Positions 40,891 through 45,684 of a DNA stretch of 64,000 bases are shown piece after piece. The notes under the pieces are model-generated. The model searched no databases and was not told the origin of the DNA. It saw only the letters and a program-made list of their open reading frames with translations. The first letter of the stretch is position 1. Every line of letters starts with the position of its first letter. Where the stretch lies: the IMG/VR virus record IMGVR_UViG_3300034072_001021, positions 186,001-250,000 of that record. One strand, written 5' to 3'. The position numbers and the translations under genes are program-made.

Positions 40891-41337
40891 ATGTCATTGG
40901 ACATCATCGAAGCCGATCTCTTCGATATCCAGGCAGATACCAAAGTCATCACGATTAACCTCGTTGGTGCCATGGGTGCAGGTGTCGCAAAGACTGCCAG
41001 AGATACAATCCCTGGACTGTATAAGCATTACAAGAAGATGTATCCGACTATCACACCGGATCAATTCATCCAGTATACCTACGGTGGAGTGAAATACCTC
41101 CTCGTCCCCACGAAGATTGATTGGAAAGCTCCATCGCCTCGTGACCTCGTATTGTCCAACCTTCACCGGTTGGCGTATCTGACCCGACGCTATAACGGGT
41201 TTGGTACAGTAGCCTTGCCACCAATGGGGTGTGGTAATGGTGGGCTGGATTGGGAGAATGATATCGTGAATTTCTATCACGCGTTGTTCGACCACCATCC
41301 TAGTAAATTTATAGCAGTAATAAAACCAAACCAGTAA
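40891..41337 (+). CDS. macro-domain ADP-ribose hydrolase, DarG/TARG1-like
   Basis: ADLF, N.VGAMGAGVA, PTKIDW and ALPPMGCGNGGLDW signature segments. Confidence 0.88.
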   Translation: MSLDIIEADLFDIQADTKVITINLVGAMGAGVAKTARDTIPGLYKHYKKMYPTITPDQFIQYTYGGVKYLLVPTKIDWKAPSPRDLVLSNLHRLAYLTRRYNGFGTVALPPMGCGNGGLDWENDIVNFYHALFDHHPSKFIAVIKPNQ

Positions 41338-41346
41338 GGGGAAACA

Positions 41347-41787
41347 ATGGAAACTGTACGTCTTACCAACATCGGCAAACACCATCTTCCGAATATCCCA
41401 CATGACGCGCCGTTGATCAGTATCAACGACCGTTACTCTCCGGCTCCGGAGATCCCGAACCGTGACAAACGGCCTGTGCTGTTTGTCACGTTCTTTCCGG
41501 GTGACCACCTGACCAGTACCGAGCGCCATGAGGGCATGACGCCAGACCTGGCCAAGAAGATCGTCAAGTTCGTGGAAGAGCACCGCGACAAGAAGCACAT
41601 CTTCGTTCAGTGCGGTGAAGGTCGTATCCGTTCCTGGACGATCTGCAGTGTACTGGAACGCATGCTCGACTTCACTGTTCATGATACCGAGCGTGCGACC
41701 ATCAAGCAAGGCATGGTGGACAAATACACCCACCACATCCTGATGTCCACGATCGTGGATATGGAGCAGGCTGGTGAACTGCTGTAA
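41347..41787 (+). CDS. CX5R cysteine phosphatase (PTP/DSP-like)
   Basis: P-loop IFVQCGEGRIRS. Confidence 0.8.
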   Translation: METVRLTNIGKHHLPNIPHDAPLISINDRYSPAPEIPNRDKRPVLFVTFFPGDHLTSTERHEGMTPDLAKKIVKFVEEHRDKKHIFVQCGEGRIRSWTICSVLERMLDFTVHDTERATIKQGMVDKYTHHILMSTIVDMEQAGELL

Positions 41788-41872
41788 AAAATAACGGCAG
41801 TAAGCTATATTTTGTAGAAGTGTCTGTCGCTCGAGTTGCCCCCGATAAGAGCGACAGACATGACTACACATC

Positions 41873-42237
41873 GTCCTTGCTGAATGAAGCCCGCGATGAA
41901 AAACAAGAGGCAGAAACAACGAGTGGGGTTAGTCGCCACTCTTGTCCAAAATGGTGAACTTACGGGGTAGCCTGAAAACTGTACCGGCTTAGTCAGCTGG
42001 TGAACCGTACGATCCTCTTCTGGATCTGGAGCGTAGCCCTCTCCATTCGGAGACGGTTAACTCCAGGGACTAATCCAGTTTTGGGTAAGTTGTTTGCGTA
42101 TCTTTCTGCATAGCCTGACGAGGGCATAGCAGGACAGGACGCACGCAGCCGTTGAGTCCTATAGATCCACCGGTGAGGCCGCCCGAAAGGGCCGCCGGGC
42201 TGCCGGGTACGGATTTGCTGGCCAGCCTATAGGACTC
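41873..42237 (+). ncRNA. structured RNA with group I intron-like core (P3-P4-P5-P7-P8)
   Basis: Pairings found by eye: CCAAAATGG/CCAgTTTTGG, TACGG/CCGTA, GGGACT/AGTCC and an extended P8, in group I order. Confidence 0.5.
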
Positions 42238-42271
42238 ATAGTACTAATTCAACCACCATGAGGACGACCTC

Positions 42272-42442
42272 GTGATCCCAAGTGTGAATCTCTCCTCTCT
42301 GCGTCAGCTCAATCGTGATCGCGATTCGACGGACAACCGTCAGAAGACGCTTGATCGCGTTGCAGAGTACCGTGCTGCAGATGAGAAAGTCAAGCAGGTC
42401 TGTCAAGAGAAAGACCTCGAGATTCCTGAGATGCATTGTTAG
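42272..42442 (+). CDS. possible 56-aa small protein
   Basis: GTG after gagg; open to a TAG just before the next RBS (MIPSVNLSSLRQLNRD...). Confidence 0.4.
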   Translation: MIPSVNLSSLRQLNRDRDSTDNRQKTLDRVAEYRAADEKVKQVCQEKDLEIPEMHC

Positions 42443-42451
42443 GAGTTTCTC

Positions 42452-42904
42452 ATGGAAATGTTCCTCGGTGTAAAGATCGTCGCAGCCAAACCCATGACCC
42501 GTCTGGAATACAACCAGTACCGTGGATGGGAACTGCCTAAGGACGAGCGTGGTGATGATGAAGGTTATCTCGTCGAGTACTTCGAGAGCGAACCCAACCA
42601 TCCAGACCACAAAGGTTACATCAGCTGGTCTCCCAAAGAGCAGTTCGATAAAGCACATTACTCCATGGGCTTTGTGGGCGACCTACCTCCGTTCATTCAA
42701 CGAATTCATGGTGAAGCTGCACAGCTCGTGCAAAACTGCACCAAGATCACTGACTTCATTACCAAGTGCAATGAAGGACAGATCGAGAACATCAACCCAC
42801 AGTACCTCGACCTCATGATTCGCCAACGTGCGGTCATGGAGACCCATCTGGGAATCCTGCGTGATCGTCTCGAAATGCTCGCTAAAGGGAAATCCACCCT
42901 ATAG
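42452..42904 (+). CDS. two-domain phage protein (G.K.V.A.PM...YISWSPK domain plus crAss001_48-like helical domain)
   Basis: aggag RBS; both halves match phage families as recalled. Confidence 0.75.
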   Translation: MEMFLGVKIVAAKPMTRLEYNQYRGWELPKDERGDDEGYLVEYFESEPNHPDHKGYISWSPKEQFDKAHYSMGFVGDLPPFIQRIHGEAAQLVQNCTKITDFITKCNEGQIENINPQYLDLMIRQRAVMETHLGILRDRLEMLAKGKSTL

Positions 42905-42919
42905 TGTGCATATTACCGA

Positions 42920-43385
42920 AATACGAGTAATGGCAGAACAGACGGCAGCTATCACGGCGGCTTAAGGTGTTCTGTAAAGGGGTGGTTCCCGTTCCGTTAC
43001 TGGTTTATCTTGAGATATACTCTGCCAATGGCTGACTGACCGAGTGCACACTCCCTCAGGCTTCTGTAGCAAGAGAAGAACACAGCCAAGGGGCGGCGTT
43101 CTCAAGATTACAGGTGTTGGCTTCACCCAGCATCAAGTCCCAACGATTTATGGTAGCTTAAGTTCGAAGCGCCGATCGCCATTGTGCAGATAAGGCAGCG
43201 CGGATCGGATTGGGAGATTCCCGGTCGGCTACCACCCGTTAGGACATCCGTGTCCTTGATTCCATGTCAGTCGGCAACAGCTCTTCGTGGCAGTTCGCAT
43301 TCAACGACTCGGCAGCCTACGTGGCGGCCAACTGGATAGAGGCACGGGTGTCCGTCTAAATCGGCAGACCTCGTGAGCTGTTGAT
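42920..43385 (+). ncRNA. large structured, pseudoknotted ncRNA candidate
   Basis: No ORF; multiple 7-10 bp helices, including crossing pairings. Confidence 0.5.
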
Positions 43386-43422
43386 CCAACCGACAACGAT
43401 CAGAAACCTCCCTTCGTCGGGC

Positions 43423-43524
43423 GGCCAGATAGGTCATTAGTTGGTTGAAGACTCAGGGTGCCATCAGAACTGCACCCATGTACGCAAGTACATACCGAGG
43501 GGTTAAAGTCCCAAGCTCTGGCTC
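43423..43524 (+). ncRNA. tRNA-like element A (10-nt anticodon-position loop, long variable arm)
   Basis: Acceptor ggccaga/tctggct, D stem ggtc/gact, stem gggtgc/gcaccc, V arm atgtac/gtacat, degenerate T arm. Confidence 0.55.
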
Positions 43525-43533
43525 GTTTTCAAT

Positions 43534-43608
43534 TCACGCTTAGCAAAGTGGTAATGCAGCAGACTGTTAATCTGCCTACCCCTGGTTCGAATCCAGGAGC
43601 GTGAGCCA
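43534..43608 (+). tRNA. trnN: tRNA-Asn(GTT)
   Basis: Full cloverleaf: tcacgct/agcgtga, gcaga-ctGTTaa-tctgc, GGTTCGAATCC, encoded CCA. Confidence 0.95.
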
Positions 43609-43810
43609 TATCCGTAAACTACTGTTTCGACAGGAGGGGTGAAAATCCCAACACGGTGTCCCAGAAGTACCGGCGTAAGCTGGGTTCTCCGGGCCTTAAC
43701 CTAGCTGGTTGACTGGTCGGTGCTTTGCATCTAAGTCCGCTTCAGGACATCAACTATAAATAGGGCTGGAGACAGCCCCATTTATTCTCTTTCGTCAGAA
43801 AGGGAAGAAT

Positions 43811-43936
43811 TCAAGTGATTGGAAACCGTGCACCGTGTGATTCGGGCTTAGCCTTAAGACACCATTAACGTCTGAGGGGTGATCCTTTACAACCGCATCT
43901 GCAGTTGTGGTGGTTTGACTCCACCCGCTTGTCTCA
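43811..43936 (+). ncRNA. tRNA-like element B (expanded interior)
   Basis: 6-bp acceptor caagtg/cgcttg stacked on T arm ggtgg-TTTGACT-ccacc; 3' C-TCA. Confidence 0.45.
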
Positions 43937-44032
43937 AACCGGGGAGCCCCCAGAGGGTGCTAATCTAGCCCGCTACATCCGTACTCTCCCGTCGGGTACA
44001 CCAGGGTGTCTGGCCTGCTCCCCACCTATTTC

Positions 44033-44106
44033 GCCTCTATAGCTGGAAGGTCAAGCAGCTCACTTGTAATGAGCCGATCTCAGTTCGATTCTGAGTGGAG
44101 GCACCA
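44033..44106 (+). tRNA. trnT: tRNA-Thr(TGT)
   Basis: gcctcta/tggaggc, gctca-ctTGTaa-tgagc, GTTCGATTC, encoded CCA. Confidence 0.93.
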
Positions 44107-44359
44107 TATTGGGACTGATCGGCGTCGTCACTGGTTATTCTGAAACCTAAATGCGCAAGCACATGGTTATGGATATAAACGATCAACGAAAGTGAAGTCG
44201 TTGCAATGACGAACGATCAGCCCCTCTCAAGCGCGCTTGTAAGAATGTACTCGGTTGCCGATCCAAAGTAACCCTCGTAAGGTGAATTCAGCGTATAGAC
44301 CTCAGGATGAGGGAAAATGCCCGGACACGAGAGGAACACATTCTTACAAGTGGATTATT

Positions 44360-44481
44360 TACCGTGTAGTCTCTCAGGCGGGACACTCTCCACAGGAGCC
44401 TTCGGCACCACCACCCCACCCTATAGTGACTGGTGACCTGTTGGTGTGGAGAGGCATGTTCGATTCTAGTGCACGGTACCC
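44360..44481 (+). ncRNA. tRNA-like element C (~65-nt extended anticodon arm)
   Basis: taccgtg/cacggta, U8A9, D stem gtct/ggac, ctctccaca/tgtggagag, GTTCGATTC loop with a weak T stem. Confidence 0.5.
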
Positions 44482-44611
44482 TATTTCGATGATCGGCCTC
44501 GACTGCTGGCAGTGTGCCCTCAGGGTTGTGGAGATAACCTGAACGGATGACGGCAGTAAGGGCGGTGTCCACTACCCTAGAAACTTGGGTCATCGAACGA
44601 ACAAAAGGACA

Positions 44612-45073
44612 GTGAATGTGAAATGGGTCACCTGGATCGTTTCGTTATTGTTCGTGTTTGTCATGCACTACGCCGACGCTTACCCTCTCACCGAGATCAA
44701 ACTTCTCAGTGATGACGTGACCAGCGTTTATGATGGCGATACGCTCACTGTCCAAGTGCCCTACATTCCAGACGTGTTTGGTAAAGACCTCTCCATCCGG
44801 ATTGTGGGTATTGACACACCTGAGATGCGTAGTACGTGCGCAACTAAGGAACAACGTGATCGTGAGAAAGCTTTGGCCATCAGGGCCAGAGACGTAGTGG
44901 TTGCCATGGTTACATCGGGTCATCGAGTGACCCTGACCAACCTCGATCGAGATAAATACTTCCGTATGCTAGCAAGTGTTTATGTCGACGGACGAAGTGT
45001 TTCCGATGAGCTGATAGCTCAAGGACTAGCCGTCCCTTATTCAGGCGACACCAAGATAGGCTGGTGTGGCTAA
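44612..45073 (+). CDS. thermonuclease (SNase) family nuclease with N-terminal signal/TM segment
   Basis: VYDGDT, IRIVGIDTPE and DKYFRMLA..ELIAQGLA motifs; hydrophobic N-terminus. Confidence 0.9.
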   Translation: MNVKWVTWIVSLLFVFVMHYADAYPLTEIKLLSDDVTSVYDGDTLTVQVPYIPDVFGKDLSIRIVGIDTPEMRSTCATKEQRDREKALAIRARDVVVAMVTSGHRVTLTNLDRDKYFRMLASVYVDGRSVSDELIAQGLAVPYSGDTKIGWCG

Positions 45074-45135
45074 TGATTCCACTGGTTTTATTTTTGCAGA
45101 TACATTACTCATCTGACAAATAACCAATGGAGGTT

Positions 45136-45684
45136 ATGATGGGTAAACTAACGGGCTGGACTGTCGACGACGAGGAAGAAGTATTCGTTCCCTGTCCAGA
45201 CTATCCAGACCTTTTCGACATAGGTTCTAAAGGGACTCTTAGAAGCCGCCGTACTGGTAAAATCTTATCCCAAACCCCTGACCATAAAGGCTACCTTAGA
45301 CATGCCACTAAAATAGGCGGTCGTTCAGGTAAGTCGATTTGCGTAAGGGTTCATGTTCAGGTTGCTAAAGCATTTGTTGGAAGAGAATCTGACGATCTGC
45401 AAGTAAACCATCTGACAGGCGATAAGGCAAAGAACGATTATACATCTCTCGAATGGTGCACTGGTAGTCAGAACTTAGAGCATGCACATGCTACTGGCTT
45501 AATGCGTAATGCCAAGGGAGTTGACCATCCATTAGCAGCACTTTCTCCCGAAGATGTTGCGGTTATACTTTCTCTTAAAGGGAAGGTTAGTCAGAGAGAA
45601 CTCGGAAGAAGATTTGGGGTAAATAAATCAACCATAGCCAGAGTCCATAATGGAATCGGTTATGGTGAAGAAGACCCTAGCTAG
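45136..45684 (+). mobile_element. free-standing NUMOD4-HNH homing endonuclease with C-terminal HTH
   Basis: VHVQVAKAF, VNHLTGDKAKND..LEWCT..N..HA; visibly AT-richer than flanking genes. Confidence 0.9.

What the first reader, a model, noticed from the sequence alone, without database searches (positions are those of the whole stretch)
41873..42237. Free-standing RNA with group I intron core topology and a built-in alternative helix
Seen: P3 CCAAAA-TGG(41946-54)/CCA-g-TTTTGG(42075-84); J3/4 GAAC; P4 TACGG(41961-65)/CCGTA(42005-09); P5 gcc/ggt; R-like CCAGGGACTA(42063-72); long P8 (42089-42110/42129-49); S-like GAGTCC(42154-59) giving a P7 that keeps the G-C guanosine-site pair. The order matches the P3/P7 pseudoknot. 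Deviations: P6 is irregular, J8/7 lacks the GAUA consensus, and no interrupted gene is evident. GAGTCCTATAG also pairs perfectly with CTATAGGACTC (42227-37), which would dismantle P7. Inference: a degenerate or repurposed ribozyme, possibly switchable, acting in processing rather than splicing.
Basis: partly seen in the sequence, partly recalled or inferred. Interest (0 to 1): 0.75.

Follow-up and report, generated by a model that had tools for sequence, protein, structure and literature searches.

The report
Hammerhead-headed structured RNA of a jumbo phage
The stretch is a real, free-standing non-coding RNA gene of a 259-kb jumbo phage, but it is not a group I intron: comparison with six relatives shows a variant hammerhead self-cleaving motif at its 5' end, followed by a roughly 300-nt, strongly covarying structured RNA of a family not in Rfam.

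Summary
The quoted strings are all at the stated coordinates, and the + strand folds far better than shuffles (z = -6.2). The group I reading fails. There is no RF00028 hit even at E <= 10, both flanking genes are intact, and the proposed P7 is not kept in homologs (5, 5, 4, 2, 1, 2 of 5 pairs).

Six homologs from related phage contigs define a modular RNA. Window 41869-41949 is a type I hammerhead-like ribozyme:
- core CUGANGA ... GAAA ... GUC;
- three covarying stems;
- a 5-6 bp pseudoknot between the stem I flank and loop II.

Rfam's RAGATH-1 hammerhead model aligns one homolog in the same register (E = 0.0077, below the gathering score). The predicted cut is between 41946 and 41947. Contigs from two tiny wastewater RNA libraries start at 41960 and hold nothing upstream.

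Downstream (about 41947-42250) lies a two-domain RNA with a loop-bulge kissing pair and invariant unpaired blocks. It sits in the phage's tRNA/non-coding island, and its function is unknown.

The window's own hammerhead has a 1-nt core insertion (A6a), a kind reported to lower activity, so cleavage here is inferred, not shown.

The parts
41814..41867 (+). H0: long upstream hairpin (13-bp core 41820-32/41849-61, loop with CCCCCG), just after the stop codon of the upstream gene and just before the hammerhead
   Evidence: Present in the MFE. An equivalent hairpin with a different stem sequence lies upstream of the RNA in L013, L015, L017 and L026. Its role is inferred: after cleavage it would become the 3'-terminal structure of the upstream transcript.
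41869..41949 (+). Type I (open stem I) hammerhead-like ribozyme. Pseudoknot 41869-74/41893-98; stem I 41877-79/41947-49; core CUGA(A)UGA 41880-87; 10.1/11.1 A.A mismatch 41888/41912; stem II 41889-91/41909-11; GAAA 41913-16; stem III 41916-26/41936-45; triplet GUC 41944-46.
   Evidence: Element table for 7 sequences: 81 of 87 stem cells paired, 0 of 2000 shuffles as good. Formal count on the CM alignment A14: 92.6% paired against 21-40% when partners are slid, 8 of 18 pairs changed on both sides. RF03152 aligns L033 in the same register, E = 0.0077. The window copy itself gives no Rfam hit.
41946..41947 (+). Predicted self-cleavage site, after C17 of the GUC triplet
   Evidence: Position follows from the hammerhead alignment. 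RNA-library contigs of X16 and X29 both begin at 41960 and hold nothing upstream. This is inferred, not shown.
41947..42250 (+). Predicted mature structured RNA (about 300 nt), two domains; the 3' end is not determined
   Evidence: MFE of this stretch alone reproduces H4, H5, H6, H7 and H8, z = -4.2. CMs R1 and R2 recover the homologs.
41962..42008 (+).
   Evidence: P4 is paired in 7 of 7 sequences, with G-C changed to A-U in L017. H4 has several pairs changed on both sides.
42020..42078 (+). H5: two-tier hairpin (outer 42020-25/42073-78, inner 42026-31/42061-66) with a 3' bulge GGACUA 42067-72.
   Evidence: All 10 modelled pairs show changes on both sides. GAC of the bulge is invariant.
41990..42072 (+). 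Loop-bulge kissing pseudoknot: UAGUC 41990-94 with GACUA 42068-72
   Evidence: GUC:GAC is invariant in 7 of 7 sequences. The 4th pair is U-A in 5, A-U in L015 (compensatory) and A.C in L013. Moderately supported.
42079..42095 (+). Block F (UUUUGGGUAAGUUGUUU), a conserved mostly unpaired block.
   Evidence: Alignments A6 and A10. P3 is only 71% paired, with one compensatory change.
42089..42149 (+).
   Evidence: 100% of cells paired; 5 of 8 inner pairs changed on both sides. The U.G pairs fix the + strand as the RNA strand.
42153..42238 (+).
   Evidence: 10 of 12 pairs changed on both sides, 95% paired. L033 has GGACACCCUGCAG/CUGUAGGGUGUCC. A natural 13-nt deletion (42178-42190) removes only the tip of an inner H8 hairpin.
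42215..42226 (+). Block H (UUGCUGGCCAGC): unpaired segment between the H8 and H7 3' strands; GGCC is invariant
   Evidence: Alignments A7 and A9. It is a palindrome in 6 of 7 sequences, extended in L017 and broken in L033. Its role is untested.
42272..42442 (+). Context: conserved small ORF (56 aa) downstream; not part of the RNA
   Evidence: Homologs align. They also occur in phages without the RNA, and the RNA occurs without the ORF.

Best explanation
The locus is an autonomous non-coding RNA gene in the tRNA/non-coding island of a lineage of jumbo phages. It is transcribed on the + strand, probably together with the upstream phosphatase-like gene.

Its 5' module (41869-41949) is a type I hammerhead-like ribozyme, stabilised by a 5-6 bp pseudoknot between the flank of stem I and the large loop of stem II. 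This module cuts the transcript after C41946. The cut would leave the upstream RNA ending in the H0 hairpin and the ribozyme body. It would release a roughly 300-nt RNA (about 41947-42250) with a defined 5'-OH end.

The released RNA folds into two domains:
- P3/P4/H4/H5, locked by a loop-bulge kissing pair;
- H6 and H7/H8.
It displays invariant unpaired blocks (AACCGUACGA, GGUAAGUUGU, ACGCAGCC, GCUGGCCAGC). It most likely acts in trans as a stable structured RNA, binding a protein or RNA partner or itself, rather than as a leader of the next gene.

Shown: the conserved structure, the hammerhead core and stems, the autonomy of the gene, and its presence in RNA libraries without its flanks.
Inferred: cleavage, the 5' end, co-transcription with the upstream gene, and any function of the mature RNA.
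For: - Structure: z = -6.2. 98.1% and 87.2% of cells are paired in the 3' and 5' domains, with 16 of 28 and 16 of 25 pairs changed on both sides and 0 of 500 shuffles as good. Slid-partner controls give 29-48%.
- Independent recovery: L033 was found by CM R1 (E = 1e-10). L015, L033 and L013 were found by CM R2, which was built without them.
- Hammerhead: CUGANGA, GAAA, A15.1-U16.1, C15.2-G16.2 and an NUH triplet (GUC six times, GUU once) are invariant and in order. Stems I, II and III covary.
- RF03152 aligns L033:966-1033 in the same register, E = 0.0077.
- Precedent in PMC3088659: pseudoknots between stems I and II occur in about 40% of natural hammerheads; stem II can be very short; it can start with a mismatch.
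- Expression: in RNA runs X16 and X29 (16-22 million letters) only 41960-42183/42219 and a stretch of the tRNA region are assembled out of 5 kb. Both contigs start 13 nt 3' of the predicted cut.
- Autonomy: in L026 the RNA lies after a tRNA-Asn, not after the phosphatase-like gene. The small ORF and the RNA occur without each other.
- Strand: invariant U.G pairs.
Against: - The window's own hammerhead has an extra A after A6 (CUGAAUGA). Perreault et al. 2011 report an insertion at this position as a natural variant of low activity. It also has only a 3-bp stem I and gets no Rfam hit.
- In all copies position 10.1/11.1 is an A.A or C.A mismatch instead of the usual G-C.
- The only Rfam hit (25.9 bits) is far below the gathering score of 56.3. 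L026 gave no hit.
- The RNA evidence rests on assembled contigs without direction. The libraries may hold DNA. The common start at 41960 could be an assembly break at a strain difference (L014 differs at 41950-53).
- Run X15 has a contig running through the predicted cut site (41825-42337).
- Only 7 sequences exist, about 6 of them distinct. The alignments used for the counts were fitted to the structure.
- No promoter or terminator was identified.
- The function of the mature RNA is unknown.
Confidence: 0.65

Rival explanations
1. One reading: a degenerate or repurposed group I intron core (P3-P8 with a P3/P7 pseudoknot) whose P7 is switched off by the alternative helix.
For: The strings exist. 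Helices equivalent to P4 and P8 are real, and the order P3-P4-hairpin-hairpin-P3'-P8 resembles a group I layout. In the window, R and S resemble the classical consensus and can form 5-6 bp.
Against: - No RF00028 hit at E <= 10 in the window, and none at E <= 5 in five homologous loci.
- P7 keeps only 2, 1 and 2 of 5 pairs in L033, L015 and L013, whereas the competing helix H7 covaries at 10 of 12 pairs.
- R is the 3' strand plus bulge of a covarying hairpin.
- The flanking genes are complete in all relatives.
- No joint spanning the region appears in the RNA runs.
Confidence: 0.03
2. The whole structured region is a cis-acting 5' leader (riboswitch-like or stability element) of the downstream small ORF and DUF2829 gene. 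The hammerhead would trim or destabilise that mRNA.
For: In the window, L014 and L017 the RNA is directly followed by the conserved small ORF. The MFE of the whole gap pairs 41942-56 with 42254-67, next to the ORF's ribosome-binding site. Hammerheads in phages often sit between genes (PMC3088659).
Against: - In L026 the RNA follows a tRNA and is followed by another conserved non-coding element, with no ORF.
- L033 has about 380 nt of non-coding DNA after it.
- The small ORF occurs without the RNA in DT01, L024 and L027.
- The RNA-library contigs cover the RNA but not the ORF.
- The long-range pairing with the RBS region is not conserved.
Confidence: 0.12
3. The hammerhead resemblance is a relic or coincidence. 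The 5' module folds as a simple hairpin (H1) plus hairpin H2 and does not cleave. The RNA is a single primary transcript of about 400 nt or more.
For: - The MFE of 41867-41954 gives H1 and stem III only, z = -1.4.
- The window copy has the A6a insertion and a 3-bp stem I.
- The 10.1/11.1 mismatch is present in all copies.
- Rfam hits are sub-threshold or absent.
- The X15 contig runs through the site.
Against: - All core nucleotides are invariant over sequences whose flanking protein is only 43-63% identical.
- Stems I and II, which a plain H1 hairpin does not need, covary (GCC/GGC to GUC/GAC; stem I has five different sequences).
- The NUH triplet is kept in 7 of 7 sequences.
- Two RNA contigs start just 3' of the site.
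Confidence: 0.15
4. The conservation reflects a DNA-level element (replication origin, packaging or protein-binding site) rather than an RNA.
For: Long inverted repeats and a conserved palindrome containing TGGCCA. No promoter was recognised.
Against: - Helices keep pairing through G.U wobble on the + strand only. These include two invariant U.G pairs, which would be C.A on the other strand.
- The - strand folds less well.
- Compensatory changes preserve pairing, not sequence.
- The hammerhead core is strand-specific.
- The region is present in RNA libraries without its flanks.
Confidence: 0.03

Closest known systems
Hammerhead ribozyme, type I, with a stem I / loop II pseudoknot (Rfam RF00163; variant model RF03152 RAGATH-1-hammerhead)
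   Same: - Invariant CUGANGA, GAAA, A15.1-U16.1 and the NUH triplet in the canonical order around a three-stem junction.
- Stem I is open; stems II and III are capped.
- A Watson-Crick pseudoknot ties the stem I side to loop II, as in about 40% of natural hammerheads (PMC3088659).
- It sits in an intergenic region of a phage.
   Different: - 10.1/11.1 is A.A or C.A in every copy.
- Stem II has only 3-4 bp under a 15-18 nt loop.
- The pseudoknot partner is the 5' flank of stem I, not a loop or bulge of stem I.
- The window lineage has an A6a insertion and a 3-bp stem I.
- Scores stay below Rfam's gathering threshold.
- It is fused to a conserved 300-nt structured RNA.
ROOL and GOLLD (and OLE): large ornate structured RNAs of phages and bacteria
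   Same: - Phage-borne and located in or beside tRNA islands.
- Extensive covarying secondary structure with a kissing interaction.
- Function unknown.
- An unpaired segment with an invariant palindromic GGCC, the kind of motif that forms symmetric intermolecular kissing contacts in OLE and GOLLD (10.1101/2024.12.08.627333).
   Different: - No Rfam match to any of them.
- About half their size or less.
- Has a ribozyme head, which, as far as I know, has not been described for them.
- The palindrome flanking GGCC is broken in L033.
- Oligomerisation is untested.
Group I intron (RF00028)
   Same: Several long-range and hairpin helices occur in an order that can be drawn as P3-P4-P5-P6-P3'-P8. 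In this one sequence there are R/S-like strings.
   Different: - No CM hit.
- No conserved P7 or G-binding site.
- No exons, P1 or P10.
- The supposed P7 3' strand belongs to a strongly covarying helix, H7.
Engineered ribozyme insulators (for example RiboJ: a hammerhead placed 5' of a functional RNA); comparison from my own knowledge
   Same: A hammerhead at the 5' end that would cut away upstream sequence and give the downstream RNA a context-independent 5'-OH end.
   Different: This one is natural, in a phage, and the downstream part is a non-coding RNA rather than an mRNA.

Membership tests
Group I intron | Match to the Intron_gpI covariance model (RF00028) | tested here: not met
   No hit at the gathering score on the window, at E <= 10 on 41700-42400, or at E <= 5 on five homologous loci.
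Group I intron | Conserved P7 helix forming the guanosine-binding site, in a P3/P7 pseudoknot | tested here: not met
   At homologous positions P7 keeps 5, 5, 4, 2, 1 and 2 of 5 pairs. Its 3' strand is part of H7, which covaries at 10 of 12 pairs.
Group I intron | Interrupts a gene or RNA gene, with P1/P10 exon pairing and splice sites | tested here: not met
   Both flanking ORFs are complete and have full-length homologs. The RNA changes neighbours in L026.
Group I intron | A spliced (joined) form in RNA | tested here: inconclusive
   No joint across the region in four RNA runs. These are assembled contigs, though, and contigs drop rare forms.
Hammerhead ribozyme | Core strand C3-U4-G5-A6-N7-G8-A9 | tested here: met
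   CUGAUGA, CUGACGA or CUGAAGA in L013, L015, L017, L026 and L033. The window and L014 have CUGAAUGA, a 1-nt insertion after A6. Such an insertion is a known natural variant of low activity (PMC3088659).
Hammerhead ribozyme | Core strand G12-A13-A14 followed by the A15.1-U16.1 pair | tested here: met
   GAAA is invariant. A-U and then C-G close stem III in 7 of 7 sequences.
Hammerhead ribozyme | NUH cleavage triplet directly 3' of stem III | tested here: met
   GUC in six sequences and GUU in L015.
Hammerhead ribozyme | Three helices (I, II, III) around the core, supported by covariation | tested here: met
   81 of 87 cells paired, 0 of 2000 shuffles as good. 92.6% paired against 21-40% when slid; 8 of 18 pairs changed on both sides.
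Hammerhead ribozyme | Canonical 10.1-11.1 base pair (usually G-C) at the base of stem II | tested here: not met
   A.A or C.A in all copies. A U.U mismatch at this position is known in active natural hammerheads, so this is a deviation and not an exclusion.
Hammerhead ribozyme | Score above the gathering threshold of an Rfam hammerhead model | tested here: not met
   Best hit is RF03152 on L033: 25.9 bits against 56.3, E = 0.0077. None on L026 or the window. RF00163, RF02276 and RF00008 find nothing at this locus.
Hammerhead ribozyme | Site-specific self-cleavage giving 2',3'-cyclic phosphate and 5'-OH ends | not testable with these tools
   Only indirect evidence: RNA-library contigs start 13 nt 3' of the predicted site.
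ROOL / GOLLD-type ornate phage RNAs | Match to their covariance models | tested here: not met
   No hit in any Rfam scan.
ROOL / GOLLD-type ornate phage RNAs | Encoded in phages beside tRNA islands | tested here: met
   tRNA-Asn and tRNA-Thr lie 1.3-1.8 kb downstream. In L026 the RNA lies about 430 nt downstream of a tRNA-Asn. In L012 the same slot holds a tRNA-Gly.
ROOL / GOLLD-type ornate phage RNAs | RNA-only homo-oligomer | not testable with these tools
   Complex prediction refuses RNA-only jobs. An invariant GGCC in an unpaired block is the only hint.

The most novel reading that the evidence does not exclude
The released RNA of about 300 nt is the first member of a new class of phage 'tRNA-island' RNAs. 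It would be matured by its own hammerhead and would then act as an RNA machine in its own right. One possibility is a homo-oligomer assembled through the invariant GGCC segment, as in OLE and GOLLD. Another is a decoy or scaffold that engages a host or phage factor of tRNA/RNA-end metabolism. The neighbouring genes encode a macro-domain protein and a cysteine-phosphatase-like protein.
Probability: 0.2. Interest if true: 0.85.

Novelty: new variant of a known kind. Interest (0 to 1): 0.62.

Why it matters
Three reasons:
- It adds an unusual natural hammerhead architecture: a mismatch at 10.1/11.1, a minimal stem II under a large loop, and a pseudoknot to the 5' flank of stem I. It was found in jumbo phages.
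- It shows that hammerhead placed as the 5' maturation device of a conserved, strongly structured non-coding RNA that matches no Rfam family.
- Large structured phage RNAs next to tRNA genes (ROOL, GOLLD) are a current open problem. A smaller, ribozyme-headed relative-in-kind, with clear invariant unpaired blocks and only about 300 nt, is experimentally tractable for cleavage assays, cryo-EM and pull-downs.

It is also a useful caution. A plausible hand-drawn group I core was wrong in its key element (P7), while the 'competing' helix was the real one.

Tried and rejected
- Group I intron: rejected.
- Known large RNAs and small ribozymes in Rfam (GOLLD, ROOL, OLE, HEARO, tmRNA, RNase P, 6S, twister, pistol, hatchet, riboswitches): no hit in the window region or in homologs. 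The weak Guanidine-II-like hairpin at 42256-42288 (E = 0.94) is not conserved in homologs.
- blastn of the region against GenBank phages: nothing.
- Exact-motif scans of IMG/VR: nothing.
- Single-protein scans of viral contigs: nothing.
- The closest isolate, Pseudomonas phage pPa_SNUABM_DT01, has an unrelated 258-nt gap at the syntenic place and no similar sequence anywhere.
- Four complete related genomes of 250-277 kb have no copy.
- Pairing of block F (GGUAAGU) with block H, proposed by RNAalifold: not supported by L033, where both blocks change without compensation.
- Block H as a strict palindrome: kept, and extended, in L017 but broken in L033.
- A recurring promoter motif TTTGTAGRAG: not enriched in the window (7 matches against 5.5 expected).
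- Extra weak R3 hits in the phage genome (L040, L041): they lack the GAAA core, so they are not hammerheads.
- Canonical hammerhead families elsewhere in the genome: none.
- Degenerate pattern for this hammerhead variant in IMG/VR and GTDB genomes: no match.
- Literature: no description of this RNA found.

Full report
**Context.** The window is bases 186001-250000 of a complete 259,140-bp virus record with direct terminal repeats, that is, a jumbo phage. Its closest isolate is Pseudomonas phage pPa_SNUABM_DT01, with 63% amino-acid identity over a 535-aa structural protein. The finding lies in an ORF-free gap, 41788-42271. Upstream is a 146-aa gene (41347-41787), a homolog of the gene annotated as a putative protein tyrosine phosphatase in DT01, with a conserved C-x5-R-S motif. 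Downstream are a 56-aa ORF (42272-42442) and a DUF2829/crAss001_48-like gene (42452-42904). After that comes 1.7 kb without convincing ORFs, holding tRNA-Asn and tRNA-Thr.

**Observation.** The + strand of the gap folds with z = -6.2 against dinucleotide shuffles; the - strand gives z = -3.4.

**Group I test.** Rfam gives no Intron_gpI hit at the gathering score on the window, none at E <= 10 on 41700-42400, and none at E <= 5 on five homologous loci. The flanking genes are complete.

**Homologs.** DNA searches found nothing. Homologs of the upstream protein led to contigs L013, L014, L015 and L017. A protein-family scan of viral and metagenome contigs gave 17 more loci.

The RNA is present in six of these loci:
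- L014: near-identical to the window.
- L013: cut off at its 3' end.
- L015 and L017: complete.
- L026: part of a 247-kb phage contig.
- L033: found only by covariance model R1, E = 1e-10, and not used to build it.

Model R2 was built from the window, L014 and L026 only. It independently recovers L015, L033 and L013. Four complete related genomes and the DT01 locus have no copy. A specific pattern finds none in IMG/VR or in 185,579 reference prokaryote genomes. The family is rare.

**Structure of the 3' part.** Splitting the sequences at invariant blocks shows the same modules everywhere, with different stem sequences.

| Region (alignment) | Cells paired | Pairs changed on both sides | Shuffles as good | Slid-partner control |
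|---|---|---|---|---|
| 3' domain (A9) | 98.1% | 16 of 28 | 0 of 500 | 32-44% |
| 5' domain (A10) | 87.2% | 16 of 25 | 0 of 500 | 29-48% |

- P3 is weak, at 71% paired.
- The 'alternative helix' (H7, 42153-64/42227-38) is the best-supported helix, with 10 of 12 pairs changed on both sides. L033, for example, has GGACACCCUGCAG/CUGUAGGGUGUCC.
- The 'R' element is the 3' strand of the covarying hairpin H5 plus a bulge with an invariant GAC.
- The in-register partner of that bulge is the invariant GUC in the H4 loop. The 4th pair is U-A in five sequences and A-U in L015.
- Invariant U.G pairs fix the + strand as the RNA strand.

**The hammerhead.** The 5' part carries an invariant CUGANGA in the loop of a hairpin (H1) and an invariant GAAA in block A. 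Laid out as a hammerhead, everything falls into place in all seven sequences:
- Stem I takes five different sequences: UUG/CAA, UGUUA/UAACG, GCGUUA/UAACGU, UGAUCA/UGAUCG, AUCUUA/UAAGAU.
- Stem II is GCC/GGC and becomes GUC/GAC in L017 and L026.
- Stem III always closes with A-U and C-G and is 4-11 bp long.
- The triplet is GUC (GUU in L015).
- H1 becomes a pseudoknot between the 5' flank of stem I and loop II.

In my table 81 of 87 stem cells pair, and 0 of 2000 shuffles do as well. On the CM alignment 92.6% pair, against 21-40% when partners are slid. Independently, Rfam's RAGATH-1 hammerhead model aligns L033:966-1033 in exactly this register. The score is E = 0.0077 and 25.9 bits, below the gathering score of 56.3.

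The deviations are:
- an A.A or C.A mismatch at 10.1/11.1 in all copies;
- a very short stem II;
- in the window and L014, an extra A after A6 and only a 3-bp stem I;
- no Rfam hit for the window or for L026.

Perreault et al. 2011 (PMC3088659) report natural precedent. Pseudoknots occur in about 40% of hammerheads. Stem II can be as short as 1-2 bp. A U.U mismatch at 10.1/11.1 is tolerated. An A6a insertion occurs naturally but gives low activity. The family is therefore hammerhead-like with good confidence. Activity of the window's own copy is uncertain.

**Expression.** In RNA libraries X16 and X29 (16-22 million letters) the sampled words held lie almost entirely within the 488-nt candidate. 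Laid on 5 kb, these runs give contigs 41960-42183 and 41960-42219, plus a stretch of the tRNA region, and nothing on the coding flanks. Both contigs start 13 nt 3' of the predicted cut at 41946|41947. This fits a processed, abundant RNA, with caveats. These are contigs without direction. DNA cannot be excluded. The common start could be an assembly break. X15 has a contig running through the site.

A natural 13-nt deletion (42178-42190) removes only the tip of an inner hairpin.

**Autonomy.** In L026 the RNA lies after the DUF2829 gene and a tRNA-Asn, and is followed by another conserved non-coding element. The small ORF occurs without the RNA in DT01, L024 and L027, and the RNA occurs without the ORF in L026 and L033. 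In L012 the slot after the phosphatase-like gene holds a tRNA-Gly. The RNA is a movable gene of the tRNA/non-coding island, not a dedicated leader.

**Mechanism proposed.** The hammerhead cuts the RNA out of a longer transcript, giving a defined 5'-OH end. The released RNA of about 300 nt alone folds into H4-H8 with z = -4.2. It presents invariant unpaired blocks and acts in trans.

What it does is unknown. An invariant GGCC in an unpaired segment recalls the symmetric kissing contacts of OLE and GOLLD. However, the flanking palindrome is broken in L033, and oligomerisation could not be tested.

**Verdict.** This is a real and interesting RNA. The group I reading is wrong. 'Ribozyme acting in processing' is right in spirit but concerns a different ribozyme class and a different place in the RNA.

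Noticed in passing
window 42905-44585: 1.7 kb after the DUF2829 gene has no convincing ORF, two tRNAs, and several non-coding blocks conserved in relatives. 42945-43150 matches L026:4656-4915, where it directly follows the RNA. 43143-43240 matches L011, L024 and DT01. 43870-44005 matches L011 (84% over 140 nt). 44229-44337 matches L019, L020 and L024. There are no Rfam hits apart from the tRNAs (one weak sub-threshold match lies antisense to tRNA-Thr). These are probably further non-coding RNA genes.
   Followed up: partly
window 43359-43698: Contigs of RNA runs X16 and X29 join 43359 to 43698, skipping 338 nt that include tRNA-Asn. X15 has a different 221-nt skip (43535-43757). This could be strain variation of the tRNA cassette or RNA processing; I could not tell which.
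   Followed up: no
window 42256-42288: A hairpin with an ACGA loop overlaps the ribosome-binding site and GUG start of the small ORF. It gives a weak Guanidine-II-like hit (E = 0.94, one hairpin only) and is not conserved in L017 or L011.
   Followed up: partly
window 40891-41787: The two genes just upstream encode a weak (sub-threshold) macro-domain match (phrog_335 'phosphatase') and a cysteine-phosphatase-like protein with an invariant C-x5-R-S motif. Both chemistries occur in RNA-end and tRNA-splicing by-product metabolism, which may or may not relate to the RNA island.
   Followed up: no
L011:4466-4976: In this relative a 511-nt gap lies between the phosphatase-like gene and the small-ORF homolog. 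It is not recognised by any of the three models, so a different non-coding element may occupy the slot.
   Followed up: no
L002:5153-5410 (DT01): The syntenic 258-nt gap of the isolate pPa_SNUABM_DT01 is GC-rich with obvious inverted repeats, but it is unrelated in sequence to this RNA.
   Followed up: no
window 44585-45684: A staphylococcal-nuclease-like gene and a free-standing HNH/NUMOD4 homing-endonuclease-like gene sit at the far edge of the tRNA island.
   Followed up: no
window 41788-41820: The motif AAAATAAC...TATnTTTGTAGRAG just after the upstream stop codon is shared by the window, L013 and L015, and partly by L017 and L033. It is not enriched elsewhere in the window. It could be a promoter-like or processing signal.
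   Followed up: partly
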